Shown here in pieces: positions 19,633-36,151 of a stretch of 64,000 nt of DNA; within the stretch, counting starts at the first letter, position 1; each line of letters begins with the position of its first letter. Below the pieces are notes generated by a model that worked only from the letters and a program-made list of their open reading frames with translations, searched no databases and was not told the origin of the DNA. The stretch lies in IMG/VR virus record IMGVR_UViG_3300043464_001630, positions 62,001 to 126,000 of that record, one strand, 5' to 3'. Position numbers and translations under genes: made by a program.

Positions 19633-21222
19633 TCACGGTTTGTTATTTTTATTTTTATTTCGAGATTCCGTGAAGAATGTTTTAAAGGATTCTAATTTAG
19701 TTGAGTTTCTCTGTTTAGATTTTTCCATAGCTTCTATGATATCTACATCTGTAAATTTTACAGGATTGTAATTAGAATCGAACATTAGTACTATCTGGGG
19801 TGCTCCTTCTAGTGTAGTTAATTTATTATAACTACAATCAAATGTACCATTTACTTCGTGTGGTGCCCCTTCTAGTGTAGTTAATTTATTATAACTACAA
19901 TCAAATGTACCGCCGACTTTTTTCGGCGAGCCTTCTAATGAAGTTAATCTATTTTTTCTACACAAGAATCCACCATATGTATTCTGAGGTGCTCCTTCTA
20001 ATGAAGTTAATTGATTATCAGAACAATCAAACGAACCATATACAATTTCAGCAGGAGCACCTCGCAAATTAGTTAATTTATTTTTTCTACAATCAAAAGT
20101 TCCGATAACTTTTTTTGGTGCTCCTTCTAATGTGGTTAACAAATTATCTTCACAAGAAAACTTACCAGTACATGTAATATTACTAAAATCTGGTAATTTT
20201 TTAATTAACATATTTGATATATTGATATCAGAATCAATAAATCCGTTTTTTATTTTACTAGCATAATAAGAAAATCTAGCCTCTTGGAAAGGTATTATTT
20301 CGAGTTCATATAATTTTTTAAATTCTTTGGTATCTTCGTGATAAAATTTTCCTTTCCATTCCAACATTCCTATATTTTTACCATCAGATACAACTGTGAA
20401 ATTTTGATCTTCTATAAATTTTCTACAAGCTTTCCTATATCTTTCGCTAACTTCTCGGTTTGCTGGCCCTTTTATTTGAACTATATGAAATTTTTTTTCT
20501 CCATATACTTTGTTTAATTCGAATGTTACTGATGGATGATTGTGTTTTTTGGGATCTCTTAAAGAATATATAAGCAATTCACCTTCTTTATATCTTTTAA
20601 AATAACGACTCTCTCCACCTTCAATCCTAGTTACTTTAGTCTCTCCTGCTGCTTGCCCCACACAGTGCCCCATGTACATACTTTCTTCTCTAAAAGCTTT
20701 ATTTGAAATTAACTTCCAAACTGGATAACCCTCATAAACTCCAACTACTTCGTAATCTACTCCATCTACACTCTCTAGTTTAGCCTTCTCAGCCTTCTCA
20801 GAGGATCGTTCCATTTCTTGATCCCACTTTTGTACTTCCTCAAACATCTGAGGAACAGTTACTTTAAATAAAGATTTTAAATAATTTTCGTCTTTAGTCT
20901 CTAAAAAATCTATTAAGTGCAATAAACGATCTTTGTACTCTGGTGCGAACTGATTGAATTGGTATATACCTTCTTTCTTAGCCCATTCTGGATCGGTATC
21001 TTTAGCTTGATAAGGAGATATGAATCCAATCTTTTGGTTATCATCAGCAGGTGACTGAAACCATTTAATATAGGTTTTTAAAAACCAATCTTTAATCTGT
21101 GAATTCTGTACGTTCTTTTCTTTTAAAATATTTTCTAATTCTAAATGTAAAGGATCTTTGGAAATTAAATTAGCTTCATGTAAGCTAGTGTATTTTTCCC
21201 ATATTAATACGGAATCATTCAT
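19633..21222 (-). CDS. Late protein with PcfJ-like domain and C-terminal leucine-rich repeats
   Basis: ESMYMGHCVG...LIYSLRD...VTFEL...VQIKGPAN; about six FDCxxNxLTxLEGAP repeats of 21-22 aa. Confidence 0.75.
   Translation of the reverse strand: MNDSVLIWEKYTSLHEANLISKDPLHLELENILKEKNVQNSQIKDWFLKTYIKWFQSPADDNQKIGFISPYQAKDTDPEWAKKEGIYQFNQFAPEYKDRLLHLIDFLETKDENYLKSLFKVTVPQMFEEVQKWDQEMERSSEKAEKAKLESVDGVDYEVVGVYEGYPVWKLISNKAFREESMYMGHCVGQAAGETKVTRIEGGESRYFKRYKEGELLIYSLRDPKKHNHPSVTFELNKVYGEKKFHIVQIKGPANREVSERYRKACRKFIEDQNFTVVSDGKNIGMLEWKGKFYHEDTKEFKKLYELEIIPFQEARFSYYASKIKNGFIDSDINISNMLIKKLPDFSNITCTGKFSCEDNLLTTLEGAPKKVIGTFDCRKNKLTNLRGAPAEIVYGSFDCSDNQLTSLEGAPQNTYGGFLCRKNRLTSLEGSPKKVGGTFDCSYNKLTTLEGAPHEVNGTFDCSYNKLTTLEGAPQIVLMFDSNYNPVKFTDVDIIEAMEKSKQRNSTKLESFKTFFTESRNKNKNNKP
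19805..19911. repeat. Exact 44-nt direct repeat at 63-nt spacing inside the LRR gene
   Basis: CCTTCTAGTGTAGTTAATTTATTATAACTACAATCAAATGTACC at 19805-19848 and 19868-19911. Confidence 0.95.
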
Positions 21223-25404: not shown

Positions 25405-26244
25405 TTATATTGTTTGTATCAAATAATTTTTGTATTCTGAATTAGGAAGACCGTTTAATAAATTAGAAAATTCAATCTTATTTATAAAATGCTTATTAAA
25501 TGCGATTTCTTCTAAACATGCTATCTTAATTCCTTGACGAGCTTGAATAGTTTCTACATAAGAAGAAGCTTGATGTAGTGTAGAAGGAACGCCAGCATCT
25601 AGCCAAACAAATCCTCTGTCTAATTTACTTACGTATAACCTGTCATTTTCAAGGTATACTTTATTCAAATCAGTAATTTCCAATTCTCCTCTTGGAGATG
25701 GTTTTAAATTTTTTGAGATATCAATTACTTCATTGTCATAAATGTATAGACCGGGAATAGCAAATTTACTTACAAATTCTTTAGGCTTTTCTACCAACAT
25801 TGTTGCCTTTCCGTTCTCGTCAAATTTTACAACTCCGTAATCTTGTGGATTACTAACTTCGTAGGCAAATACTTTTGCTCCAGTGAAGAAAGTGAAATCT
25901 ATGTTTCCGTGAAAAATATTATCACCAAGAATCAACATCACTGAATCATTTCCGATGAAATCTTCGGCAATAATGAAAGATTGAGCAATACCATCAGGCT
26001 TTTCTTGAATTTCATATGTAATATCCAAACCAAGATGTCTGCCGTTCTTTAATAATTTTTTATATGCAGGAACATAATCAGGAGAAGATATAATGCAAAC
26101 TTCCTGAATACCAGCATTCATTAATGTTGCCATTGGATAATAAATCAATGGTACATCATATACCGGCAATAATTGTTTATTGACGGATTGTGTTAATGGA
26201 TAAAGACGAGATCCAGTTCCTCCTGCTAAAATAATTCCTTTCAT
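25405..26244 (-). CDS. rmlA: Glucose-1-phosphate thymidylyltransferase
   Basis: MKGIILAGGTGSRLYPLT..VNKQLLPVYD.P.IYYP, EKPDGIAQ, VEKP, KPSPRGELEITD, WLDAG. Confidence 0.97.
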   Translation of the reverse strand: MKGIILAGGTGSRLYPLTQSVNKQLLPVYDVPLIYYPMATLMNAGIQEVCIISSPDYVPAYKKLLKNGRHLGLDITYEIQEKPDGIAQSFIIAEDFIGNDSVMLILGDNIFHGNIDFTFFTGAKVFAYEVSNPQDYGVVKFDENGKATMLVEKPKEFVSKFAIPGLYIYDNEVIDISKNLKPSPRGELEITDLNKVYLENDRLYVSKLDRGFVWLDAGVPSTLHQASSYVETIQARQGIKIACLEEIAFNKHFINKIEFSNLLNGLPNSEYKNYLIQTI

Positions 26245-26615
26245 CCTAGTAATTCTAATAATTTAATATTTTCTTCTAATTCTCTTTTAGACATCTCCAT
26301 AGCTTTTGCAATTAAAGCTAATTCGGTATCTTCTTTTTTAGGTTCTTCTTTGGTTTTCTTAATATAATTAATTCGTTTCTTTTTAACTTTTGGAAACAGG
26401 TTTAGTACAAATTGGTACTGCTCTTCTTTCGTCTGAAATAATTTACCGTATTTGTTCGATGTTTCGTTGATGATGTAAGCAACATCGGAAGAATACATAG
26501 AACCCCAGCGATTAAGCATATACAAATTGAATTGAGTTTCGCCTTCATTGATGGTATTTAGTTTCTTCTTTGTAAAAAGAACAGAATCTATATAATTAAA
26601 AATAGTGTCATCCAT
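26241..26615 (-). CDS. gp62: Clamp loader small subunit
   Basis: FNLYMLNRWGSM...QYQF.LN..PK.KK.RINYIKK helical pattern of T4-like gp62. Confidence 0.75.
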   Translation of the reverse strand: MDDTIFNYIDSVLFTKKKLNTINEGETQFNLYMLNRWGSMYSSDVAYIINETSNKYGKLFQTKEEQYQFVLNLFPKVKKKRINYIKKTKEEPKKEDTELALIAKAMEMSKRELEENIKLLELLG

Positions 26616-27091
26616 TATCGTTTCAAATTAATATAACAAGCTTCTTTACTATACATGTTTTGTTCGAAAATTTCTTCTAGTTCTTCTTTAGAAGAAGGAT
26701 GAATAGATTTGATATTTTTGAAATTACTCATGATGCTTAAATCATCTTCAGCCCAATGACTGAAACCATCATGTGAGTAATCTTTATCTCTTCCAGATCC
26801 GATAAGCTTTACTGGAATTTTTTCTTCATTCAAGTAATTTCTGATTAATTCAAAAGGTCTGTACAGAAGAAAAGGTGTGATACTATAACACACTGGAATT
26901 TTCCCATCAAGAGCCAAACCAACAGCAGCACCAATCATTAATTGCTCTGCTGCGCCAACATTATAGCAACGATCTGGATATTTTTGTAAAATATTATCAA
27001 AAAACCTAAATCCCAAATCTGCTGTTAAAAAATAAGCATTGGGTTCTTTCTCGATAAAGTTTTCAATTAAATTTGCGAATGTTTTTCTCAT
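26615..27091 (-). CDS. Transketolase-like, pyrimidine-binding subunit
   Basis: FLTADLG, YNVGAAEQLMIGAAVGLA, PFLLYRPFE.IR, HDGFSH. Confidence 0.9.
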   Translation of the reverse strand: MRKTFANLIENFIEKEPNAYFLTADLGFRFFDNILQKYPDRCYNVGAAEQLMIGAAVGLALDGKIPVCYSITPFLLYRPFELIRNYLNEEKIPVKLIGSGRDKDYSHDGFSHWAEDDLSIMSNFKNIKSIHPSSKEELEEIFEQNMYSKEACYINLKR

Positions 27092-27726
27092 GAAAATAAT
27101 AGTTGGTTTTTCTCCTCTTCACTTCTCAATACATAGTAGTGAGCTTCCATTTCTTTCTCTTTTAAGAGGGGATATTCATTAAGATTTGTTAGATGAAATT
27201 TAGCATCTGGACAGAATAGTTTAATTTTTTGAATTAGCAAATCAGTATCCACTAAATCATAAGCAGAATATCCATTTGCATTTACATGCAATTCTAAATT
27301 AGAAATTTTCTTATTTCCGATAAAATTTAAACTTTCCCAAATACTTCCTTCGAAGGATTCCCCATCGGAAATAAGGCAATAAGAAGTTTTATCAGGATTA
27401 GCCAAAGCAAATCCAACTGCTATAGGCAGTCCTAACCCAAGGCTTCCGGTAGAACAGTCTAGACGATTCTCTTCATCAAAACAAGGATGAATTCCATGCT
27501 TTTCCAAAAGGTACTCTGCATCTACCTCATAGAAATGCTCCAACACAACATACAAAGCCAACCCTGCATGTCCGTTCGATAAAACAAAACGTTCGTCGTC
27601 TTTCTTTTTGTTGTAGATATCGTATATAATTGGTAGAGAAGTCAAACAACTGCTAATGTGAGATAACTTATGATCATAAGAAATCTGAACAATACGATTT
27701 GAAAGTTTTTTTATAATATCTTCCAT
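27088..27726 (-). CDS. Transketolase-like, TPP-binding subunit
   Basis: HISSCL, FVLSNGHA, STGSLGLGLPIAVG, ISDGE..EGSIWE...NANG TPP motif. Confidence 0.92.
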   Translation of the reverse strand: MEDIIKKLSNRIVQISYDHKLSHISSCLTSLPIIYDIYNKKKDDERFVLSNGHAGLALYVVLEHFYEVDAEYLLEKHGIHPCFDEENRLDCSTGSLGLGLPIAVGFALANPDKTSYCLISDGESFEGSIWESLNFIGNKKISNLELHVNANGYSAYDLVDTDLLIQKIKLFCPDAKFHLTNLNEYPLLKEKEMEAHYYVLRSEEEKNQLLFS

Positions 27727-27728
27727 TT

Positions 27729-28439
27729 TTATAAATTTTTAAAAGCAAGCATGTTCAAATTGTTATTCAAAAATTCACTATTCATCATTTTAATCTGATA
27801 TCCCATATTAATGAATTTCTGAGCCAACTGCTCTGGATAAGAAAATGGAGGATGTATTTCGATATAGATATTATTACAAATATCCTTACATTCTTCAAAT
27901 GTCGGATCTTTCAATACAGCAGACACTTCACCGCCTTCAATGTCCAATTTCAATAAGTCAATTACAGGTTCTTTGATTACATTTTTGATAAAATTTAAAA
28001 TAGTAGTGCATCGTACCAATCTACCTGTTTCTGAAATTCGATTCGTCGTAGTATTGCTGTCGTCAATACTAAAACTACAAAATCCATGATAGTCATTAAA
28101 TGCTAAATCGTGTAGTTCGATATTAGTCAAATTGTTACTACGGCATAAGTCTTGTAGTACTTCGATATGCTCGACTGTAGGTTCGATGGCGTAAATCTTT
28201 TTAGAAACTTTATTCAAGTATAGAGAAAATAATCCAATATTTGCTCCCGCATCAATTACTACTGCATCTTTATTTTCGAAGATTTTTAAAAACTGCGGAT
28301 CGTTATAATGACCGTTATTAATTTCTCGCTCAATAATATGCTTTGAGTAAGAATTCTTATTATTATAATAATTTAGAAAAGAATTCGAACCCGACAAATC
28401 AATAGGACTATCTCCCAAAATGTTTAGTAATATACTCAT
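27729..28439 (-). CDS. FkbM-family SAM methyltransferase
   Basis: VIDAGANIGLFS, IYAIEP, IDLLKLDIEGGE. Confidence 0.92.
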   Translation of the reverse strand: MSILLNILGDSPIDLSGSNSFLNYYNNKNSYSKHIIEREINNGHYNDPQFLKIFENKDAVVIDAGANIGLFSLYLNKVSKKIYAIEPTVEHIEVLQDLCRSNNLTNIELHDLAFNDYHGFCSFSIDDSNTTTNRISETGRLVRCTTILNFIKNVIKEPVIDLLKLDIEGGEVSAVLKDPTFEECKDICNNIYIEIHPPFSYPEQLAQKFINMGYQIKMMNSEFLNNNLNMLAFKNL

Positions 28440-29250
28440 TTTGATATATTTTATACGATTCTAAACCTTTTTCAAGTGTAAACTTACTTTTAAAGTTGTA
28501 TTTTGTAGAAATATAATCTGTGTCAGCTTTCCATATCACCGAATCACATTCTTTAAATTTATCAATTAGTATACATTTTAAATCTTTATTCAAAACTTTA
28601 GAAAATATATATGCAATTTCTAAATTAGAATAAGACACTCCAGACCCTGCATTCAAAATATCTGCTTTAGTTAAACTTTTATCAGATTTTAATACCAATT
28701 CAATTAAACTAGTAAAATCTTGGATGTAGAAAAAATCATGATAACCATGTATCAAAGATACTTCTTCTCCGTTTAATATCTTTCTGTATAGCGTAGGAAT
28801 TAAACGATGTTCTGGTTCGAATTCTCCGTATATGCTAAATGGACGAACCACACAAATGTCTTTATCATATGTTCGTGCATATGCCTGTGCTAAAACCGTT
28901 CCGCATGTTTTAGTAGCTGCATATATTGTTTCTGGATTGCACACATCTGTTTCTTTCATATTATTTTGAACTTTTCCGTATTCAGAAGAAGATCCAAAAT
29001 ATATCATTTTATTCACATCATTATCACGAACATAATTAAGAATATCTAATGTCAAAACGACATTACTATCAAACATTAATTCATTTTTGTAAATTTCTCC
29101 AGCACTATGAATAATAATTTCTGGTTTAAACTCTTTTAATTTTTCGGTTACATTATCTCCTCTTTTATAACAAAAATATTCATATTGAGGAAGATAATGC
29201 ATGATAGCTTTTCCTAAAAAGCCAGAAGACCCTGTTAAAAACAATCTCAT
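28408..29250 (-). CDS. NAD-dependent epimerase/dehydratase/reductase (extended SDR)
   Basis: TGSSGFLG, GSSSEYG, YAATK, RPFSIYG. Confidence 0.92.
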   Translation of the reverse strand: MRLFLTGSSGFLGKAIMHYLPQYEYFCYKRGDNVTEKLKEFKPEIIIHSAGEIYKNELMFDSNVVLTLDILNYVRDNDVNKMIYFGSSSEYGKVQNNMKETDVCNPETIYAATKTCGTVLAQAYARTYDKDICVVRPFSIYGEFEPEHRLIPTLYRKILNGEEVSLIHGYHDFFYIQDFTSLIELVLKSDKSLTKADILNAGSGVSYSNLEIAYIFSKVLNKDLKCILIDKFKECDSVIWKADTDYISTKYNFKSKFTLEKGLESYKIYQNEYITKHFGR

Positions 29251-30074
29251 AAAGTTTCACAAATTTTAACAAGATTACGAACCGTATCAAGTTGTTTATT
29301 AGAAAATTCTTTAAAATTATCAGAAACTAAATGTAATGTCGATTTGGCATGTTCTATATTATCCATTCCGTATGCTACGCCACATCTTTTGTGAGGAAAT
29401 TTAGAGTACCATTCTTCCGCAGACATCTCTGAATCTGGTATTACAATCGGAATACAACCACACAATGCTGCTATAACCACCCAAAAACAAGCATTGTCGT
29501 AGCAATAAAAATATTCCACTTTTCTCAAAACATCACCCATAACTTTCCAATTATTTTCTAATTTAGATAGGTCAATTGCATCATCTGGATGAATTTTATT
29601 TTTCATACCACCTTTTTTTACAAAAAACGCCGATCCTTTTCTAGGTTCAGAAGATGCAAAAAAATAATCAGTATCAATAAAAGTTGTAGTTAATAATCCT
29701 CTAGACTCTGATTCATTTTTAATATGAAAATATTCGGAATATTTAAATATTAAATCTGTATCTAATTTATTAGAATAAAATCCATTAGCTCCAACTCCAG
29801 CACATTCACCCGGAGTGTTGAGAATCCATCTTACCACATTTTTAGCCTTCATTGGATTTCCTATAGTAATCTCTGGATATATAACTACTACCTCTTCTCT
29901 GGAGAACTTTTTAGCTCCTACAAATGGAGCATTTAAATCTTTATGCGTTATTTTAGAAGTGACGTATGCTTCTTCTCCCAATTCATTTAAATCATGACAC
30001 AATTTATGTAAAGCTACAATTCCTCCCGAATTGTATATAAATGTACAAATATCAATTATATATTTTTTCTTCAT
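29247..30074 (-). CDS. Putative glycosyltransferase / glycan-modifying protein
   Basis: SGGIVALHKL, VIYPE, VRWILN, FYCYD...AALCGC.PIVIP; context in sugar cluster. Confidence 0.5.
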   Translation of the reverse strand: MKKKYIIDICTFIYNSGGIVALHKLCHDLNELGEEAYVTSKITHKDLNAPFVGAKKFSREEVVVIYPEITIGNPMKAKNVVRWILNTPGECAGVGANGFYSNKLDTDLIFKYSEYFHIKNESESRGLLTTTFIDTDYFFASSEPRKGSAFFVKKGGMKNKIHPDDAIDLSKLENNWKVMGDVLRKVEYFYCYDNACFWVVIAALCGCIPIVIPDSEMSAEEWYSKFPHKRCGVAYGMDNIEHAKSTLHLVSDNFKEFSNKQLDTVRNLVKICETL

Positions 30075-31027
30075 TAGAATTTTTTAATAACAAAATTATT
30101 AGAATCAATCTCTATCTTTGATGGATTGAATTTATCAATCTTATACAAGATCTTTTTTATTAAGTCTTCGGTTAGTGTCATGTTACAATCGAACACATAA
30201 TGACCATAAACTTCTTCATCATTTTTATTGTAAAATTTAACCAAATCATTATCTACTCGAATCTGATCATCTGTCACAACTGCTAATTTTACATACTTCA
30301 AGAATTTCTTGGTGAAAGGCTCGTATCTCCACTTAGAGATGAAAGTATTACCAGATTCTCTTAATTTCTTGTGTGTTTCTTCTGTCGAAACGCCTGTGTC
30401 TGGTTTGTTTTCTCCGTGTACAATATGAGCAGACGTAACCAATGCATGTTTTAGTTTATTAACTTTTAAACAAACTTCGTAATCATTGTCTTGATGATAG
30501 AACCCAAATCTTTCGTCGTACTTTCCAATCACATCATATACCGAACGCCTACAATAAACATTGAAACCTAACAAATATTTCGTGGTTTGATATCCATAAT
30601 AGATATGATCATCTAATGGAAAATTATTGTAAGAGTTTTGATGCCATGTTCGATCTACCGGACTTGCAGACATTAATTCTGGATCTTTCTCGAACTCTTT
30701 TAGAATATTACCGACACAATTTGGTAATACTTTCAAATCACTATTTGAAATACAAATAAATTCAGAATCACAATGTTCTAATGCAATGTTTAAAAATTTG
30801 TTGTAGTTAAAATCAAATTCTGGACAAATTGCTAAAATTTTATCAGAAACCGAAGACCATACAGATAAATCAAAATTTTTATTAGATTCTACCAATACGA
30901 TACGCTTAATGAAGCGATCCCCGTCTTGTAAAGAAGACTCTACACATTTCTTCACCATTTGGAAATGTGCTTCATCTTTAGCTAAAGAAAGTACGATAAT
31001 ATCAAGATTTTCCATAAGATAAAACAA
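30074..31027 (-). CDS. GT2-like glycosyltransferase
   Basis: YNKFLNIA, CISNSDL, IGKYDERFGFYHQDNDY. Confidence 0.8.
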   Translation of the reverse strand: MFYLMENLDIIVLSLAKDEAHFQMVKKCVESSLQDGDRFIKRIVLVESNKNFDLSVWSSVSDKILAICPEFDFNYNKFLNIALEHCDSEFICISNSDLKVLPNCVGNILKEFEKDPELMSASPVDRTWHQNSYNNFPLDDHIYYGYQTTKYLLGFNVYCRRSVYDVIGKYDERFGFYHQDNDYEVCLKVNKLKHALVTSAHIVHGENKPDTGVSTEETHKKLRESGNTFISKWRYEPFTKKFLKYVKLAVVTDDQIRVDNDLVKFYNKNDEEVYGHYVFDCNMTLTEDLIKKILYKIDKFNPSKIEIDSNNFVIKKF

Positions 31028-31736
31028 GCGAGTTCAAGCAACTCGTTTCTTTTTTATAATTTTCTAAAACTTGTAATCCATAATTATAGAGAGCTTTGTT
31101 ATTGTGTGTTCCCGAAACATCATTATCAATATCACCATCAGAATCACCGAATCTATTCACTCTCCACGACATTCCTTCATAATGTTTAAAATAGTATGGT
31201 TCTGCTTTAACTTCGCCAATTCTTAATCCAGATTTTTTAATGTCTTCAAAAAAAGAAGATCCAACATCATAACGAATTTCTCCTCGGCTTCTTAAACGTT
31301 CTTCATCATAAAACTTAATACCCTTCGACTTGATGTTCTTAACATTGATGAAACAAAACCAAGGATGCGCTCGTTTATGTAAACGCTTTCCTCCACGATC
31401 ACCTACGATTTCTCCCATTAAACTCAAATCATTATTTTTAAAAGATTCGAATAATTCTGAACAAGATCTGAAGAATACCACATCTGTATCTACTAAAAGT
31501 GCATAATCTGTATCAACTTTTTCTAATAAAAGATCCACAGATGATCCATGCAATCCTCCTGAGTTTAGAAAAAATGGTACATTTCCTTTTTCTAAAATAT
31601 CTTTTGTTTCAGTATTAGTAGAATTTTCAGAAATTAAAATTTTTGTATCAGGATGAATGTTCAAAAATGATTTGAGCATGTTCTCCGTAACTAACGGAGT
31701 ATTATAAGAGCAAGAAATTAAGGTAAGGTTATTCAT
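31002..31736 (-). CDS. GT-A-fold glycosyltransferase
   Basis: ISCSYNT, HG..VDL, ALLVDTDVVF (DxD). Confidence 0.7.
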   Translation of the reverse strand: MNNLTLISCSYNTPLVTENMLKSFLNIHPDTKILISENSTNTETKDILEKGNVPFFLNSGGLHGSSVDLLLEKVDTDYALLVDTDVVFFRSCSELFESFKNNDLSLMGEIVGDRGGKRLHKRAHPWFCFINVKNIKSKGIKFYDEERLRSRGEIRYDVGSSFFEDIKKSGLRIGEVKAEPYYFKHYEGMSWRVNRFGDSDGDIDNDVSGTHNNKALYNYGLQVLENYKKETSCLNSLVLSYGKS

Positions 31737-32518
31737 TTATTTTTGTAAATTTGTTTAAGTGTATTTTGCACCATATCAATGGATACTGAGGGGATTTTCA
31801 ATAATTCTTCTCCGTGTTTTTTATGAAAATAATTAAGTCCCCTTAGTACTGTTTCATTGTGTTTTGGAGAAGACGAAATAGTACTGGTACTCACAGACCA
31901 AGGAATATCAGCCAAATACTTGTTGGAATTTGCTATATCAGCAAACCACCAAAAAGGAGGATGCATATCATTCTTAATAATATTATAGGTATGTTCTAAA
32001 TGCTCCGTCGCATTGAAGAAATTTTCATCCATCAATCCTACTTTATCCAAACACTTCTTTGTGTAAAAGCAAAATGCCCCCACACAATGGGGATAAAGCT
32101 CAACAGAGACATCATTTTTATAATCAATCTTAACTCTCGGATTTGGCGTTTCTGAATTCGGGAATTTATTCATCAATCCATGTTGACTGTAATTGAAATG
32201 CTGAATTCCAGTTTCCTTAGAAGCATTTATATATCTCTCAAATACCGAAGAATCTTTGATAATAATATCATCTTCCATTAAGAAGATATATTCACATCCC
32301 TTTTCTAAAAGATGCTTCATTGCATCGTTTTTACTAACTCCAATTCCTTTATTCGTTTCGTGCTGAATTAAAGTCGCATCAATATCGAAATCATAAGGAG
32401 TTCCGTCATTTACTACCACAAGTTCATGTACTGCTTCTTTAGGAACAGAAGAGAAAATCTTTTTAAAATAATCAGGACGTTTATACGTCATGATTCCTAA
32501 ACCAATTTTATTAGACAT
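31733..32518 (-). CDS. GT2 glycosyltransferase
   Basis: IMTYKRP, VVVNDGT, NKGIGVSKN, FLMEDDI, KVGLMDENF. Confidence 0.88.
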   Translation of the reverse strand: MSNKIGLGIMTYKRPDYFKKIFSSVPKEAVHELVVVNDGTPYDFDIDATLIQHETNKGIGVSKNDAMKHLLEKGCEYIFLMEDDIIIKDSSVFERYINASKETGIQHFNYSQHGLMNKFPNSETPNPRVKIDYKNDVSVELYPHCVGAFCFYTKKCLDKVGLMDENFFNATEHLEHTYNIIKNDMHPPFWWFADIANSNKYLADIPWSVSTSTISSSPKHNETVLRGLNYFHKKHGEELLKIPSVSIDMVQNTLKQIYKNK

Positions 32519-32532
32519 AATGTAATTATAAA

Positions 32533-33480
32533 CTAAAATGAATAAAATTCAATAGTTTTCATTAATCCGTCAATAAAATTAGTTTTAGGAGTCCAGTTTA
32601 ATTCGTTCTTAATTTTACTGAAATCAATGGCATACCTATAATCATGTCCTTTTCTGTCTTCTACGTATTCAATAACATCGCCTACTTTAACGTCCATCAA
32701 ACAACATACTGTTTGTAAAATCTGTAGGTTATTTCGTTCGCAATCTCCTCCGATGTTATAAGATTCTCCGTCTTTACCATTCTTTAGAATTTCCCAAATT
32801 CCATCACAATGGTCATCTACATACAGCCAATCGCGGATGTTCTGACCGTTTCCATAAATAGGAACTTTCTTTCCTTCGCGGATGTTTTTAATAATTTTGG
32901 GAATTAGCTTTTCCTCGTGTTGACGAGGTCCATAATTGTTCGAACAATTAGACATCGTAACAGGAAGCTTATAAGTATGATGATAACTGTTCACTAAATG
33001 ATCACTAGCTGCTTTTGATGCCGAATATGGCGAGCGTGGACTATATGGCGTGGTTTCGGTAAAATACCCAATATCTGTTAATGAACCGAATACTTCATCA
33101 GTAGAAATGTGGTGAAATCTTTCCAAGTTTCCGTATTTTCTACTAGCTTCTAACAGAGAAAATGTACCATTAATATTTGTTTTGATAAACTTGTCGGGAT
33201 TAGCGATAGAATTATCTACGTGACTCTCTGCTGCGAAATGAACCACGTGTGTAATTTTATTAACATACAACAAACTTTCCATCAAATGAGTATCATTGAT
33301 ATCAGCTTCTACGTTGATTAACTTGTAATTTAAAATATTATCTACATTTAAATTATCTTTATTTCCTGCATAAGTACAAGAATCTACATTAACTACAACG
33401 TTAACTTCCGGAAGATTTATAATCTTATTAATGAAGTTACTTCCGATAAATCCGTATCCTCCAGTTACTAGAATTTTCAT
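32533..33480 (-). CDS. rmlB: dTDP-glucose 4,6-dehydratase
   Basis: Start MKILVTGGYGFIGSNF at 33480; HFAAESHVDNSI, HISTDEVFG, PRSPYSASKA, NCSNNYGPRQHEEKLIP, RKGHDYRYAID. Confidence 0.97.
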   Translation of the reverse strand: MKILVTGGYGFIGSNFINKIINLPEVNVVVNVDSCTYAGNKDNLNVDNILNYKLINVEADINDTHLMESLLYVNKITHVVHFAAESHVDNSIANPDKFIKTNINGTFSLLEASRKYGNLERFHHISTDEVFGSLTDIGYFTETTPYSPRSPYSASKAASDHLVNSYHHTYKLPVTMSNCSNNYGPRQHEEKLIPKIIKNIREGKKVPIYGNGQNIRDWLYVDDHCDGIWEILKNGKDGESYNIGGDCERNNLQILQTVCCLMDVKVGDVIEYVEDRKGHDYRYAIDFSKIKNELNWTPKTNFIDGLMKTIEFYSF

Positions 33481-33513
33481 CCTAAAATTTATCAGTTTGT
33501 CTAAATAATTCAA

Positions 33514-34134
33514 ATGGCTAATGAAGTATTCATAAATATTAAAGATTTACCAGAAATAACAGAACCAGCTAATGGAGAATATCTATTAATAGAGACTTCT
33601 ACTGGTACTCATATTATAGATTTTGCTAATTTCATTATACCAACTGCAAATACCGTAATTACTACAACAGTAGAACAGAATACTACCGCAATTTTAAATC
33701 TGTCTTCTGCTTACACTAGCGGAGACGATTCACTTTCTGCTAGTATTGATACTACTAATACAAAATTAGAAACATTATCCACTTCTACTCTAGAATTATC
33801 TAGTACTGTCGGAACTTTCCAAAATGTTTATATTGGAAAAACACAAATAACCATTCCTTTTGGTGGATTTCAAGCATCTAATATATTATCTCCTCTGTCT
33901 ACTTCTGTAAATCTACTAGCCAGTGATTTGATCATCACTCCAGCAAATCAATATGCCACAAAACAAAGTGCATATGTAACAACTATTGATAACGGAGTAG
34001 TGACAATAAAAGGAGGGTTTTACAAACTTTATGCCAATATTTCAGCATTAAGCAGTAAAACCCTCATAACTTCAGAGGAAGGATTAGCAGAAGAAGATGC
34101 TATCTATAATGTAATGGCAATTAAGAAAGTTTAG
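33514..34134 (+). CDS. Putative fibre/decoration protein
   Basis: N-terminal IKDLPEIT..ANGEYLLI module, S/T-rich coiled-coil middle; TAAATA-N6-ATG. Confidence 0.55.
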   Translation: MANEVFINIKDLPEITEPANGEYLLIETSTGTHIIDFANFIIPTANTVITTTVEQNTTAILNLSSAYTSGDDSLSASIDTTNTKLETLSTSTLELSSTVGTFQNVYIGKTQITIPFGGFQASNILSPLSTSVNLLASDLIITPANQYATKQSAYVTTIDNGVVTIKGGFYKLYANISALSSKTLITSEEGLAEEDAIYNVMAIKKV

Positions 34135-34882
34135 TCTTCTTAACGAAATCACGAATAAGTTCTTCTTGTTCTTTGATGTGCTTTTCTTTTCTGTCTTCTT
34201 CGACTTGTTGACTGATCAATCTTTCCAAGTCTTCGATGTTTTCTGGATTTAGAATAGTGTCGTCTTCTTCTCCGTAAACATTACCTGTTTCATCTAAGTA
34301 TTGACGAATCAATAGAATACGCTCTTCTGGCTTACCGAAAATTTCAATAATAGCAGGACAATCGTCTGCTGAAAAGAAAGGTGTCTTTCCTAAAGAATGT
34401 TGGTATTCGTGAAACAATGCCTTAAAGATGTTATCAATTTCCCCAATATACTGAGGATCGGTTTCTCGCTTTCCGTTATCAACAATTTCAACTGGTGAAA
34501 CTGCTGTGATAGGAATGAAGAAAATTAAGTCTAAATTCTTTAGAGATTCCTTAACAATAGGAATCATTTTATCGATGAATTGCTTATCGATGTCAGAAGT
34601 TTCCATTTCCGCAGCCCACAATGAAAACACCAAACAATCTAACGGATTTCGGTCAAAAATAACGTCATCCGTCTTAGAATACTTCTGCATTTCATCAATC
34701 ATATGATTGAGAATAGCCCACTGTCCTTCTTTATTGCAGTTCTTACTATGGGGATAGTTCCCAGACTTCAGAAGATCTCTGTAAGAGGATTCTGGAGTTT
34801 TGTAATTAGGCCAAGCTCTTAAAAAGTCATTTACTAATGTGGTTTTACCAACATTGATACTTCCTGAAATTCCAATTCGCAT
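34121..34882 (-). CDS. P-loop nucleotide kinase (AAA_28/NadR-kinase-like)
   Basis: RIGISGSINVGKTTL Walker A; IFDRNPLD. Confidence 0.8.
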   Translation of the reverse strand: MRIGISGSINVGKTTLVNDFLRAWPNYKTPESSYRDLLKSGNYPHSKNCNKEGQWAILNHMIDEMQKYSKTDDVIFDRNPLDCLVFSLWAAEMETSDIDKQFIDKMIPIVKESLKNLDLIFFIPITAVSPVEIVDNGKRETDPQYIGEIDNIFKALFHEYQHSLGKTPFFSADDCPAIIEIFGKPEERILLIRQYLDETGNVYGEEDDTILNPENIEDLERLISQQVEEDRKEKHIKEQEELIRDFVKKTKLS

Positions 34883-34899
34883 AAGTTATTATCTTACTA

Positions 34900-35310
34900 C
34901 TAAAGTTCTGGATTTTCAAGGCGTTTCTTCCTCTCTTTAATCTTTTCGTAGCTTTTCTGTAAACCCCAAATGTCGCGTTTTGTATAATTACAGAGAGGAT
35001 ATTTGTGGGCATCTTCAATTTTAGCCCAAATATATCCATCATGTTCATCACTTAACTTAACAGGAGAAGCATAAGCTCCTCCTTTATATAAGCAGAAATT
35101 AGGTTTACAAAAAATAATCTTAGACCAAGAAATAGTCAAACCTGTCTCTTCTTTGACTTCACGATTCAATCCTTGAGTAAATGTTTCGTTGTTCTTGATA
35201 TGACCACCGGGAAGATGGAACTTCTTCAAATGTTTAGACATTAATAGAAGAACCTTATCTTTATTCAAGATCAAAATTTTGGCAATTTTATTAGTATCAT
35301 TATCATCCAT
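34900..35310 (-). CDS. NUDIX hydrolase
   Basis: LPGGHIKNNETFTQGLNREVKEETGL Nudix box; LSDEH. Confidence 0.93.
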   Translation of the reverse strand: MDDNDTNKIAKILILNKDKVLLLMSKHLKKFHLPGGHIKNNETFTQGLNREVKEETGLTISWSKIIFCKPNFCLYKGGAYASPVKLSDEHDGYIWAKIEDAHKYPLCNYTKRDIWGLQKSYEKIKERKKRLENPEL

Positions 35311-35392
35311 GAATGGATTATAACAGCCAAGGATGATAGAATCAACGTTTTATTTGTGCTTACAAACGGTACATTTTTGCTAAATAATATTG

Positions 35393-36151
35393 ATGGCAAA
35401 AAAAGTTCGTAAACGCGAAGTCGTGGAGAATATCGAAGAAGATATACTCCTTCATGGTTTAGAAGACACCCACAAAAAAGAACTATTTTGTAATTTCAAA
35501 ATAACAAATAACTTCAAACTAAATGAAGTACATAATTCATTTTTAGAACTAGTTTTGTATAAAGATACAAAAATGGTTTTTGTGGACGGCCCAGCAGGAA
35601 GTGGTAAGAGTTATCTTGCCGTATATGCAGCATTACAATTACTGAAGAAAAAACAAACAAATAAAATAATTTATATTCGTTCAATAGCAGAAAGCGCATC
35701 AAAAAGTATCGGAAGTTTACCCGGAGAGCTATCTGTCCGATTTCAGCCTTGGACACTACCATTGATCGAGAAAGTCGAGGAATTAGTAGGTTCTAAAATA
35801 GGAGGAGAACTTATGAGAAATGGATTTATCGAAAGTATTCCAATCAATTTCGTAAGAGGTCTAACATTTAGAGATTCTGTTGTGATTCTCGAAGAGTCAC
35901 AAAATTTCACAAAAGAAGAACTAGTGACAGCACTTACTAGATTTGGAGAAAATACAAAATATATAGTAATCGGAGACAGCTTTCAATCAGATATTGCAAA
36001 CAAATCAGGTTTTAACAAAATTCGTGATGCATTCGATGACGAGGAAAGTGAGGCAAAAGGAATTCATAATTTCACATTCACTGAAAACGAAGTAGTGCGG
36101 TCTCAAATATTACGATTTATTGTTAAAAAATTGGAGAATTCTCCGCATTAA
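35393..36151 (+). CDS. phoH: PhoH-family ATPase
   Basis: GPAGSGKSYLA, F.RGLTFRDS.VILEESQN, GD..QSD, VVRS. Confidence 0.93.
   Translation: MAKKVRKREVVENIEEDILLHGLEDTHKKELFCNFKITNNFKLNEVHNSFLELVLYKDTKMVFVDGPAGSGKSYLAVYAALQLLKKKQTNKIIYIRSIAESASKSIGSLPGELSVRFQPWTLPLIEKVEELVGSKIGGELMRNGFIESIPINFVRGLTFRDSVVILEESQNFTKEELVTALTRFGENTKYIVIGDSFQSDIANKSGFNKIRDAFDDEESEAKGIHNFTFTENEVVRSQILRFIVKKLENSPH

What the first reader, a model, noticed from the sequence alone, without database searches (positions are those of the whole stretch)
25405..33480. Candidate pathway for a branched-chain dTDP-sugar: RmlA + RmlB + split mini-transketolase + SDR + methyltransferase + glycosyltransferases
RmlA and RmlB make dTDP-4-keto-6-deoxyglucose, but rmlC and rmlD are not recognisable, so rhamnose is not the obvious end product. 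A two-subunit TPP enzyme (212 + 158 aa, lacking the usual C-terminal domain) sits inside the cluster. TPP enzymes are known to add two-carbon units to NDP-4-keto sugars (YerE in yersiniose synthesis). A C-branched or higher-carbon sugar, reduced by the SDR, methylated by FkbM and transferred by 3-4 GTs, is a plausible product for virion, DNA or host-surface glycosylation. The transketolase is therefore probably not a pentose-phosphate auxiliary gene.
Basis: partly seen in the sequence, partly recalled or inferred. Interest (0 to 1): 0.65.

Follow-up and report, generated by a model that had tools for sequence, protein, structure and literature searches.

The report
Phage mini-transketolase sugar-branching gene cassette
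A large freshwater T4-like phage carries a swappable six-gene module in which a stripped-down two-piece transketolase travels with a nucleotide-sugar reductase, a methyltransferase and two glycosyltransferases, so it most likely builds an unusual branched sugar and is not a booster of host central metabolism.

Summary
The gene content is as described, on the minus strand: RmlB, three GT2s, a 275-aa protein (now shown to have a GT-B glycosyltransferase fold), an extended SDR, an FkbM methyltransferase, a 212 + 158 aa transketolase pair with no C-terminal domain, a 124-aa protein and RmlA.

One premise fails. A bona fide rmlC lies 78 kb away in the same 236-kb genome. No canonical rmlD exists.

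The mini-TK pair belongs to a large family that is almost entirely viral (536 IMG/VR contigs). In 80 viral loci it sits with the SDR (78/80) and a methyltransferase. In 52/80 loci an NDP-hexose 4,6-dehydratase lies within 10 kb, and in 41/80 it directly follows the Pyr subunit.

A near-identical relative keeps the RmlA/RmlB/GT2 frame. It replaces exactly window 26624-31076 (TK pair, FkbM, SDR, two GTs) with an aminosugar module.

All classical TK catalytic and donor-binding residues are kept. This favours transfer of a hydroxyacetyl unit rather than the acetyl unit used by YerE.

Best reading (about 0.5): C2 branching of dTDP-4-keto-6-deoxyhexose, then reduction, methylation and transfer. The chemistry is inferred, not shown. 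The closest precedents are the uncharacterised split-gene TKs proposed for miharamycin.

The parts
32533..33513 (-). RmlB, dTDP-glucose 4,6-dehydratase. The likely true start is the ATG at 33480, giving 315 aa. It is part of the conserved frame of the island.
   Evidence: TIGR01181 427.7 bits against a cut-off of 365.1. TDE and YxxxK motifs are present. 93% aa identity to the RmlB of relative L169.
31733..32518 (-). GT2-family glycosyltransferase, 261 aa, part of the frame.
   Evidence: PF00535 E 1.4e-4; phrog_2456 glycosyltransferase E 7.8e-24; weak match to rhamnosyltransferase TIGR01556, 29 bits. 80% identical in L169.
31002..31736 (-). GT2-family glycosyltransferase, 244 aa, part of the frame.
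   Evidence: PF00535 E 1e-5. 56-59% identical in L169 and L170.
26624..31076 (.). The swappable TK cassette: GT2 (317 aa), GT-B (275 aa), SDR, FkbM, TK-PP and TK-Pyr. This is the stretch with no DNA similarity to the otherwise collinear relative L169.
   Evidence: blastn of the window against L169: 21264-26623 aligns at 84% and 31077-32841 at 75%, with nothing between. L169 carries 8.2 kb of other sugar genes there.
30074..31027 (-). GT2-like glycosyltransferase, 317 aa, inside the cassette.
   Evidence: PF00535 E 3.9e-5, 24.1 bits against a cut-off of 23.3. Absent from L169.
29247..30074 (-). Compact GT-B-fold glycosyltransferase, 275 aa, inside the cassette. It belongs to a viral family with no Pfam model.
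   Evidence: No Pfam, NCBIfam or PHROG match. 136 homologues, all unnamed. AF2 model pLDDT 94.2. Top PDB folds are all GT-B glycosyltransferases: 7qsg, 3mbo, 8xsh, from E 6e-7. A 65%-identical homologue sits at the same position next to SDR-FkbM-TK in an 88-kb phage contig.
28408..29250 (-). Extended SDR of the NDP-sugar type, 280 aa. Predicted reductase or epimerase, not a dehydratase.
   Evidence: PF01370 E 1.2e-33. The best solved relatives are dTDP-glucose 4,6-dehydratases (2hun, 66 bits). It has GxxGxxG and YxxxK but SSxEYG in place of TDE. RmlD model TIGR01214 scores 37.8 bits against a cut-off of 224. A homologue lies in the TK locus (within 10 kb) in 78/80 viral loci, mostly 1-3 genes upstream of the TK pair.
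27729..28439 (-). FkbM-family SAM methyltransferase, 236 aa.
   Evidence: PF05050 E 3.1e-14; TIGR01444 69.7 bits against a cut-off of 37.7. An FkbM gene is present in 49/80 viral loci. In most others a Methyltransf_24 gene takes the same slot.
27088..27726 (-). Mini-transketolase PP (ThDP diphosphate-binding) subunit, 212 aa.
   Evidence: PF00456 E 1e-8; NF004559 transketolase 76.8 bits. The equivalents of E. coli TktA H26, H66, H100, D155, E160, N185 and H261 are all conserved. It lacks TktA residues 43-52, 90-95, 132-145 and 209-236.
26615..27091 (-). Mini-transketolase Pyr subunit, 158 aa, with no C-terminal domain.
   Evidence: PF02779 E 1.6e-15. The best solved relative is the split TK of C. 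hydrogenoformans, 6yaj. The equivalents of R358, D381, E411, F437, D469, H473 and R520 are conserved. The chain runs from the R358 equivalent (residue 2) to the R520 equivalent (last residue). The predicted complex with the PP subunit scores ipSAE 0.85 against a best control of 0.01.
26241..26615 (-). 124-aa protein conserved across the lineage at the border of the island. Probably not a pathway enzyme.
   Evidence: No family match. 60-95% identical in many 220-242 kb relatives whatever the island holds. The model is all-helical and of low confidence, pLDDT 59.7, so it is not a cupin.
25405..26244 (-). RmlA, glucose-1-phosphate thymidylyltransferase, 279 aa, part of the frame.
   Evidence: TIGR01207 363.6 bits against a cut-off of 360.65; PF00483 E 5.7e-59. 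89% identical in L169.

Best explanation
The region is a variable glycan island of a 236-kb freshwater T4-like phage.

A conserved frame makes dTDP-4-keto-6-deoxy-D-glucose. The frame is RmlA at one end and RmlB plus two GT2s at the other.

The interchangeable six-gene cassette at 26624-31076 converts that intermediate into a C-branched sugar. An RmlC encoded 78 kb away may first epimerise the intermediate.

Proposed steps:
1. The two mini-TK subunits form a ThDP enzyme of the transketolase type.
2. This enzyme takes a two-carbon glycolaldehyde unit from a ketose phosphate or hydroxypyruvate.
3. It adds the unit to the C-4 keto group of the dTDP-sugar, giving a 4-C-hydroxyacetyl branch.
4. The 280-aa SDR reduces a keto group, most likely in the new side chain, as YerF does.
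5. The FkbM enzyme O-methylates the product.
6. The cassette's own GT-B and GT2 enzymes transfer it. All are soluble, and no Wzx, Wzy or initiating transferase is present. The target is therefore probably a virion protein or an existing host glycan.

Shown here: gene identities, the subunit pairing model, conservation of catalytic residues, synteny and the cassette swap.

Inferred: the acceptor, the donor, the position of the branch, the role of the SDR and the final target.
For: 1. RmlA, RmlB and RmlC all pass NCBIfam equivalog cut-offs.
2. The mini-TK keeps the GDG...N ThDP motif, the catalytic Glu and all four TK histidines. The two subunits are predicted to bind: ipSAE 0.85, best control 0.01. 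That mark was reached by 51 of 78 solved complexes and 2 of 108 mismatched pairs.
3. In 80 viral loci the pair co-occurs with the SDR in 78. A methyltransferase is also present: FkbM in 49, and Methyltransf_24 in most of the rest. A TDE-motif NDP-hexose 4,6-dehydratase lies within 10 kb in 52 and directly after the Pyr gene in 41. Representative dehydratases score best on TIGR01181, at 282-302 bits.
4. The linked SDR is most like dTDP-glucose 4,6-dehydratases but lacks their catalytic Asp. It is therefore an NDP-sugar reductase or epimerase.
5. Relative L169 has flanks 84-93% identical and the same RmlA/RmlB/GT2 frame. It replaces exactly the TK cassette with a module of DegT aminotransferase, a cupin and SDRs. 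DegT-family enzymes are known to act on NDP-4-keto-6-deoxyhexoses; this is background knowledge, not tested here.
6. No pentose-phosphate genes were seen in the cassette or its conserved neighbours.
7. There is precedent for ThDP-dependent branching of NDP-4-keto sugars followed by NAD(P)H reduction (PMC9306805). Split-gene TKs have also been proposed to add hydroxyacetyl to keto sugars (PMC12247030, section 2.3).
Against: - No biochemical evidence exists for any member of this family. Even the Streptomyces split TKs are uncharacterised (PMC12247030).
- The mini-TK keeps the residues that bind sugar phosphates and set D-threo specificity in classical TKs: R358, R520 and D469. This is equally compatible with an ordinary X5P/R5P reaction.
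- Ketones are unusual TK acceptors.
- 28 of 80 viral loci show no dehydratase within 10 kb, and RmlA is in none of them.
- The genome encodes RmlC, and the SDR could simply be an RmlD substitute.
- The complex prediction may pass from memory of solved TK structures.
Confidence: 0.5

Rival explanations
1. The cluster makes dTDP-L-rhamnose or an O-methyl-rhamnose. RmlA, RmlB and the distant RmlC give dTDP-4-keto-L-rhamnose, the 280-aa SDR replaces RmlD, FkbM methylates and the GTs transfer. On this reading the TK pair does something else or is accessory.
For: An equivalog-level RmlC is in the genome. The 280-aa SDR is the only spare extended SDR and gives a weak RmlD_sub_bind match. GT2_261 has its only NCBIfam hit on a rhamnosyltransferase model.
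Against: RmlC is 78 kb away, beside an IS607-like element. RmlC is present in only 4/80 TK loci, whereas the SDR is in 78/80. The SDR scores 37.8 bits against an RmlD cut-off of 224. This reading leaves the strictly linked TK pair, which moves with the SDR and methyltransferase as one cassette, without a role.
Confidence: 0.2
2. The pair is a minimal but ordinary transketolase: an auxiliary metabolic gene that rebalances pentose-phosphate or Calvin-cycle flux during infection. This is how the homologues in algal viruses were read.
For: All classical TK catalytic, phosphate-binding and stereospecificity residues are conserved. The literature annotates the MpV-SP1 genes this way (PMC5454428).
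Against: In 79 of the 80 viral loci sampled the pair lies with an extended SDR of the NDP-sugar type, and all loci inspected sit in sugar-nucleotide/glycosyltransferase neighbourhoods. No other PPP genes were seen. It is exchanged together with GTs for an aminosugar module in a sister phage. The Yellowstone Lake phycodnavirus YSLPV2 table lists TK genes 163-164 next to GTs 161-162, FkbM 166 and an epimerase/dehydratase 167 (PMC4602308). The loss of the C-terminal domain and of surface loops is family-wide.
Confidence: 0.12
3. The TK pair serves the glycan pathway with different chemistry. It might extend an aldehyde acceptor to a higher-carbon sugar. It might instead make a small ketol substituent, or branch at a position other than C-4, for example after a 3,4-ketoisomerisation.
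For: TKs normally prefer alpha-hydroxy-aldehyde acceptors, and the D469 equivalent that reads the acceptor's C-2 hydroxyl is conserved. Neighbouring genes vary between loci and include radical SAM/SPASM, DegT and a second dehydratase-like SDR.
Against: No enzyme that would create an aldehyde acceptor, and no ketoisomerase or cupin, is present in this cassette. The dehydratase is the most constant neighbour after the SDR and methyltransferase.
Confidence: 0.15

Closest known systems
YerE/YerF of yersiniose A biosynthesis, with relatives ErwE/ErwF and MygE (PMC9306805)
   Same: The proposed logic is the same. A ThDP enzyme adds a carbon branch to the C-4 keto group of an NDP-6-deoxy-4-ketohexose, an NAD(P)H reductase then acts on the branch, and a GT transfers the product.
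   Different: YerE is a single-chain enzyme of the decarboxylase/acetolactate-synthase superfamily. It uses pyruvate or longer 2-keto acids and a CDP-3,6-dideoxy sugar. The phage enzyme is of TK type, with PP before Pyr on two chains, and shares only the ThDP motif: TPP_enzyme_C scores 21.9 bits over 34 residues. Its retained TK histidines point to a glycolaldehyde donor.
Split-gene transketolases proposed for miharamycin/amipurimycin, plus 13 other Streptomyces clusters (PMC12247030, section 2.3)
   Same: A two-gene TK is proposed to transfer a hydroxyacetyl unit onto a keto sugar. In both cases the function is inferred from gene context only.
   Different: Those are actinomycete secondary-metabolite clusters. 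The review says all known cases come from Streptomycetes. Here the family is viral, aquatic and much more numerous. It lacks the C-terminal domain and is linked to a 4,6-dehydratase, an SDR and a methyltransferase. The sequence relationship to the Streptomyces enzymes was not tested because no sequences were at hand.
Alpha-keto acid dehydrogenase E1-type alpha/beta pairs that add C2 branches (KbDH-alpha/beta, aldgamycin and kosinostatin enzymes; PMC12247030, section 2.2)
   Same: A two-subunit ThDP enzyme with the PP domain on one chain and the Pyr domain on the other, branching deoxy-keto sugars.
   Different: Those are E1 homologues that use pyruvate. The phage pair scores as transketolase: NF004559 76.8 and 61.5 bits, against PDH E1-alpha 19.7 bits.
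Canonical split transketolase (Carboxydothermus hydrogenoformans, PDB 6yak/6yaj; PMC7661550)
   Same: It is the best solved relative of the Pyr subunit (E 1.4e-15) and a good match to the PP subunit. It has the same alpha2beta2-type division and the same catalytic motifs.
   Different: The canonical subunits are 309 and 341 aa and include the C-terminal domain. The phage subunits are 212 and 158 aa. The mini-TKs form a separate clade on a long stem (SH-aLRT 100, quick tree).
dTDP-L-rhamnose pathway RmlABCD
   Same: RmlA, RmlB and RmlC are present at equivalog level.
   Different: There is no RmlD. RmlC is unlinked. A TK/SDR/MT cassette sits between RmlA and RmlB.
'Transketolase' genes of algal viruses MpV-SP1 and YSLPV2 (PMC5454428, PMC4602308)
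   Same: Two adjacent TK-domain genes. In YSLPV2 they lie next to GTs, an FkbM gene and an epimerase/dehydratase, which is the same cassette layout.
   Different: Those are eukaryotic large DNA viruses, and the genes were read as Calvin/PPP genes or left unclassified. Direct sequence comparison was not done here.

Membership tests
Transketolase-type ThDP enzymes (TK/DXS/E1 fold, PP domain before Pyr domain) | PP domain with a GDG-X(25-30)-N ThDP/Mg2+ motif | tested here: met
   SDGE...N: D121, E126 and N151 align to TktA D155, E160 and N185 and are invariant in the family.
Transketolase-type ThDP enzymes (TK/DXS/E1 fold, PP domain before Pyr domain) | Pyr domain with the catalytic glutamate that activates ThDP | tested here: met
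   E49 of the 158-aa subunit aligns to TktA E411. It lies in the predicted subunit interface.
Transketolase proper (EC 2.2.1.1) | Donor- and acceptor-binding residues H26, H66, H100, H261, R358, D469, H473 and R520 (E. coli numbering) | tested here: met
   All are conserved in the window protein and in 20 viral homologues. Only S385 and H461 differ.
Transketolase proper (EC 2.2.1.1) | Third (C-terminal, Transketolase_C) domain; full size of about 620-680 aa, or about 270 + 310 aa when split | tested here: not met
   No PF02780 match in the whole genome. The subunits are 212 + 158 aa. TktA residues 521-663 and several loops are absent. This is family-wide.
Transketolase proper (EC 2.2.1.1) | Ketol transfer between sugar phosphates (X5P + R5P) | not testable with these tools
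   This needs an enzyme assay.
YerE-like branching enzymes (decarboxylase/ALS superfamily) | Single chain with TPP_enzyme_N, TPP_enzyme_M and TPP_enzyme_C domains (Pyr domain before PP domain) | tested here: not met
   Only a 34-residue ThDP-motif match to TPP_enzyme_C, at exactly the cut-off. There are no N or M domains and the domain order is reversed.
E1-type (alpha-keto acid dehydrogenase 2) branching pairs | Homology to E1 alpha and beta subunits | tested here: not met
   PDH E1-alpha TIGR03182 scores 19.7 bits against a cut-off of 393.85. The transketolase models score far higher.
dTDP-L-rhamnose pathway | RmlA and RmlB | tested here: met
   TIGR01207 363.6 bits (cut-off 360.65); TIGR01181 427.7 bits (cut-off 365.1).
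dTDP-L-rhamnose pathway | RmlC | tested here: met
   TIGR01221 235.3 bits (cut-off 155.75). It lies at G000:C1:9171-9695, outside the window and unlinked.
dTDP-L-rhamnose pathway | RmlD | tested here: not met
   PF04321 in the whole genome hits only RmlB and the 280-aa SDR. That SDR scores TIGR01214 37.8 bits against a cut-off of 224.
NDP-hexose 4,6-dehydratases (for the 280-aa SDR) | Catalytic Thr-Asp-Glu triad next to YxxxK | tested here: not met
   The SDR family has SS(S/A)EYG where the dehydratases have STDEVYG. YxxxK and GxxGxxG are kept.
GT-B glycosyltransferases (for the 275-aa ORF) | Two-Rossmann-domain GT-B fold | tested here: met
   AF2 pLDDT 94.2. There are 97 PDB matches at E <= 0.001 (TMq up to 0.56); every listed match among the best 50 is a GT-B-fold transferase, all glycosyltransferases except one pyruvyltransferase (5ax7). 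No sequence family matches.

The most novel reading that the evidence does not exclude
The viral mini-transketolases are a previously unrecognised class of nucleotide-sugar C-branching enzymes. They would transfer a hydroxyacetyl unit from ordinary ketose phosphates onto NDP-4-keto-6-deoxyhexoses. The TK phosphate site (R358/R520 equivalents) would be re-used for the sugar-proximal phosphate, and the trimmed loops and missing C-domain would make room for the nucleotide. On this reading hundreds of aquatic T4-like phages, and some prasinovirus-like algal viruses, decorate virions or host surfaces with a methylated branched octose not yet seen in viral glycans.
Probability: 0.35. Interest if true: 0.8.

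Novelty: new variant of a known kind. Interest (0 to 1): 0.62.

Why it matters
ThDP-dependent branching of nucleotide sugars is known from only a few bacterial systems, and the transketolase route has never been shown in vitro.

This cassette offers a small, soluble, two-subunit candidate. Hundreds of natural variants exist, and the likely substrate is clearly defined.

It would correct a recurring annotation: viral 'transketolase' read as a Calvin/PPP auxiliary gene. It would add a new sugar type to phage and algal-virus glycobiology. It could also give biocatalysis a minimal TK that accepts ketones.

The cassette swap also shows that this phage lineage diversifies its glycan by exchanging modules on a fixed dTDP-4-keto-sugar supply. 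This is relevant to host range and to recognition of virions.

Tried and rejected
- Megablast of the cluster against 50,697 phage records found nothing.
- tblastn of the PP subunit against the same records gave only hits at 35% identity or below. Most were unannotated metagenomic or contaminated records.
- PHROGs has no family for either TK subunit, the 124-aa ORF or the 275-aa ORF.
- Reading the 124-aa ORF as a hidden cupin (RmlC or ketoisomerase) was rejected. Its model is all-helical, and it is conserved whatever the island holds. The model was too poor (pLDDT 59.7) for a fold search, so none was run. A gp62-like identity that I recalled from memory could not be supported.
- YerE homology was rejected.
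- The NCLDV capsid search in five large TK-bearing viral records found nothing. The control also rang nowhere, so that search is uninformative. Gp23 was found in 3 of the 5.
- Regular-expression attempts to find other dehydratase classes in the 28 loci without a TDE enzyme were uninformative.
- The careful ML tree did not finish in time. Only the quick tree with SH-aLRT support is reported.
- The hydrophobic stretch at 195-213 of the 275-aa protein falls on helix and strand elements of the predicted GT-B fold (secondary structure), so I read it as fold core, not a membrane helix.
- No RNA run holds the region, so expression could not be checked.

Full report
**Context**

The window is G000:C1:62001-126000 of a 236,391-bp IMG/VR virus record that CheckV rates complete. 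It is a T4-like myovirus. It carries gp15, a T4-type portal, gp13-like genes and PhoH. G+C is about 32%.

It is only distantly related to cultured phages: gp15 is about 25% identical to its cyanophage counterparts, and there is no megablast match. Near-identical DNA occurs in lake and freshwater metagenomes from 13 studies.

**Observation**

They overlap or abut, which suggests one transcription unit.

- RmlA passes its NCBIfam equivalog cut-off, and so does RmlB.
- RmlB most likely starts at the ATG at 33480, since the family models align from residue 13.
- The TK pair is 212 aa (PP domain) plus 158 aa (Pyr domain).
- No Transketolase_C domain exists anywhere in the genome.
- The 275-aa ORF matches no sequence family. 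A confident model (pLDDT 94.2) matches only GT-B-fold transferases, nearly all glycosyltransferases. The cluster therefore has four GTs.
- None of the proteins has a membrane helix.

The genome has a bona fide rmlC at C1:9171-9695, 78 kb upstream. It scores TIGR01221 235.3 bits against a cut-off of 155.75. It lies next to a DUF1501 gene and an IS607-like resolvase/TnpB pair.

There is no canonical rmlD. The only extended SDRs in the genome are RmlB and the 280-aa SDR of the cluster.

**The mini-TK as an enzyme**

I mapped the pair onto E. coli TktA. It keeps H26, H66, H100, D155, E160, N185, H261, R358, D381, E411, F437, D469, H473 and R520. Only S385 and H461 differ.

The Pyr subunit runs from the R358 equivalent (residue 2) to the R520 equivalent (its last residue). 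Compared with TktA, residues 43-52, 90-95, 132-145, 209-236, the inter-domain linker and 521-663 are missing.

The two subunits are predicted to bind. The ipSAE score is 0.85 and the best of three controls is 0.01. That mark was reached by 51 of 78 solved complexes and 2 of 108 mismatched pairs. The runs agree in at least 98% of contacts and the partner's pLDDT is at least 92. The predicted interface includes the ThDP motif and the catalytic Glu. This pass may reflect memory of solved TKs.

The retained histidines bind the C-1 hydroxyl of the donor in classical TKs. That is established TK enzymology recalled from knowledge, not tested here. It favours a glycolaldehyde unit over the acetaldehyde unit of YerE or E1-type enzymes.

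**Distribution**

- The PP subunit has 3,994 homologues of about 200-215 aa.
- 536 IMG/VR contigs encode a relative.
- Among one genome for each of 185,579 species, only seven MAG or SAG contigs carry close (39-53% identical) mini versions. The remaining hits are almost all canonical split TKs with a C-terminal domain, plus four small-ORF hits that fall outside the mini-TK clade.
- In a quick ML tree the 26 viral and 7 MAG/SAG mini-TKs form one clade on a long stem, with SH-aLRT 100.
- Three of five large TK-bearing viral records carry a T4 Gp23 capsid gene.
- Published tables show the same layout in the algal virus YSLPV2: GTs 161-162, TK 163-164, FkbM 166 and epimerase/dehydratase 167 (PMC4602308). 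MpV-SP1 has two TK genes, which were read as Calvin/PPP genes (PMC5454428).

**Neighbourhood**

Counts are from 80 viral loci.

| Feature | Loci |
|---|---|
| Pyr subunit present | 79/80 |
| 280-aa-type SDR | 78/80 |
| FkbM methyltransferase | 49/80 |
| GT34-like gene | 49/80 |
| GT17-like gene | 33/80 |
| 4,6-dehydratase with TDE and YxxxK motifs, within 10 kb | 52/80 |
| That dehydratase directly after the Pyr gene | 41/80 |
| RmlA | 0/80 |
| RmlC | 4/80 |

Where FkbM is absent, a Methyltransf_24 gene takes the same slot in most loci. The dehydratases score best on the dTDP-glucose 4,6-dehydratase model, at 282-302 bits.

The linked SDR is most similar to dTDP-glucose 4,6-dehydratases but has SSxEYG in place of STDEVYG. 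It is therefore an NDP-sugar reductase or epimerase.

**Cassette swap**

A 240.5-kb relative (L169) is collinear with the window at 84-88% nucleotide identity. It shares RmlB (93% aa), GT2_261 (80%), GT2_244 (56%), the 124-aa gene (87%) and RmlA (89%).

Window 26624-31076 has no counterpart there. That stretch holds TK-Pyr, TK-PP, FkbM, the SDR, the GT-B and GT2_317. L169 instead carries 8.2 kb with a DegT aminotransferase, a cupin and three SDRs. A third relative (L170) has yet another set of genes.

The 124-aa gene is 60-95% identical across many phages of 220-242 kb, whatever the island holds. Its model is helical. It is a core gene of the lineage at the island border, not a pathway enzyme.

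The simplest reading is that alternative modules tailor one common intermediate, the RmlA/RmlB product.

**Mechanism proposed**

1. dTDP-4-keto-6-deoxy-D-glucose is made, and RmlC may 3,5-epimerise it.
2. The mini-TK adds a C2 ketol unit at C-4.
3. The SDR reduces a keto group, by analogy with YerF (PMC9306805).
4. FkbM methylates the product.
5. The GT-B and GT2 of the cassette transfer it.

No Wzx, Wzy or initiating transferase is present, and the island lies next to the neck and portal genes. I therefore think virion-protein glycosylation somewhat more likely than de novo polysaccharide synthesis. This is inference only, and nothing supports DNA glycosylation.

The phosphate-binding arginines could hold the sugar-proximal phosphate of the dTDP-sugar. 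The spacing from carbonyl to phosphate is the same as in erythrose 4-phosphate. This too is a hypothesis.

**Rivals**

- A methyl-rhamnose pathway with the SDR acting as RmlD (0.2).
- An ordinary TK serving as an auxiliary metabolic gene (0.12).
- Other TK chemistry within the glycan pathway (0.15).

The conserved classical substrate residues are the main argument for the ordinary-TK reading. The synteny and the swap are the main arguments against it.

**Comparison with known systems**

- Functionally the cassette parallels YerE/YerF, but the enzyme is not a YerE homologue.
- It is not an E1-type pair.
- It fails one defining feature of transketolase proper, the C-terminal domain.
- The nearest idea in the literature is the split-gene TK proposed for miharamycin and amipurimycin. 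That proposal is said to be restricted to Streptomycetes and has never been tested in vitro (PMC12247030).

I therefore rate this a new variant of a known kind, with the chemistry unproven.

Noticed in passing
window 17351-19588 (-): The T4-type portal gene is 745 aa here but 598 aa in the close relative L169. About 440 bp (roughly 18058-18499) has no counterpart in L169 and gives an Intein_splicing match (31.7 bits, below the cut-off of 35.8). This is probably a mini-intein. A third relative (L170) has a 1077-aa portal with an intein.
   Followed up: partly
window 19633-21222 (-) and 13365-15521 (-): Two large ORFs are absent from the otherwise collinear relative L169. One is 529 aa, PcfJ-like (E 4.4e-7), and lies between the portal gene and gp15. 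The other is 718 aa with no family match. They may be inserted or mobile genes within the structural module.
   Followed up: partly
outside the window: G000:C1:7100-12355 (L004): rmlC sits between a DUF1501 gene (382.7 bits) plus an unknown 252-aa gene on one side and an IS607-like pair on the other. The pair is a serine resolvase and a TnpB with a Cas12f1-like TNB domain. This hints that rmlC arrived or moved with a mobile element.
   Followed up: no
L015-L087 (cellular genome loci): Among the 80 loci fetched from bacterial and archaeal genomes (66 of them with canonical split TKs), 50 have an RmlB-like extended SDR within 10 kb. In six canonical split TKs examined, the equivalents of D469, R358 and R520 are often replaced. 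Many cellular split TKs may therefore also serve glycan pathways and not the pentose-phosphate pathway.
   Followed up: no
L169 1774-9992 and L170 1-10000 (relatives): The same genomic slot holds an aminosugar-type module in one sister phage: DegT, a cupin and three SDRs. In another it holds a set with GT10/GT7C, Methyltransf_24-DUF5672 and a mannose-6-P-isomerase-like cupin. This is a hypervariable glycan island next to the neck and portal genes.
   Followed up: partly
L006 and L007 (contigs of 296 kb and 294 kb): The TK cassette also occurs on contigs of about 295 kb. These additionally carry Cpn10, DctP/TctC-type solute-binding proteins, AdoHcy hydrolase, QueF and dCMP deaminase. I did not resolve whether they are jumbo phages or cellular genomes.
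   Followed up: no
window 34121-36151: Directly beyond RmlB lie an AAA_28/deoxynucleoside-kinase-like gene, a NUDIX hydrolase and PhoH. These are nucleotide-metabolism genes, probably unrelated to the glycan island.
   Followed up: no
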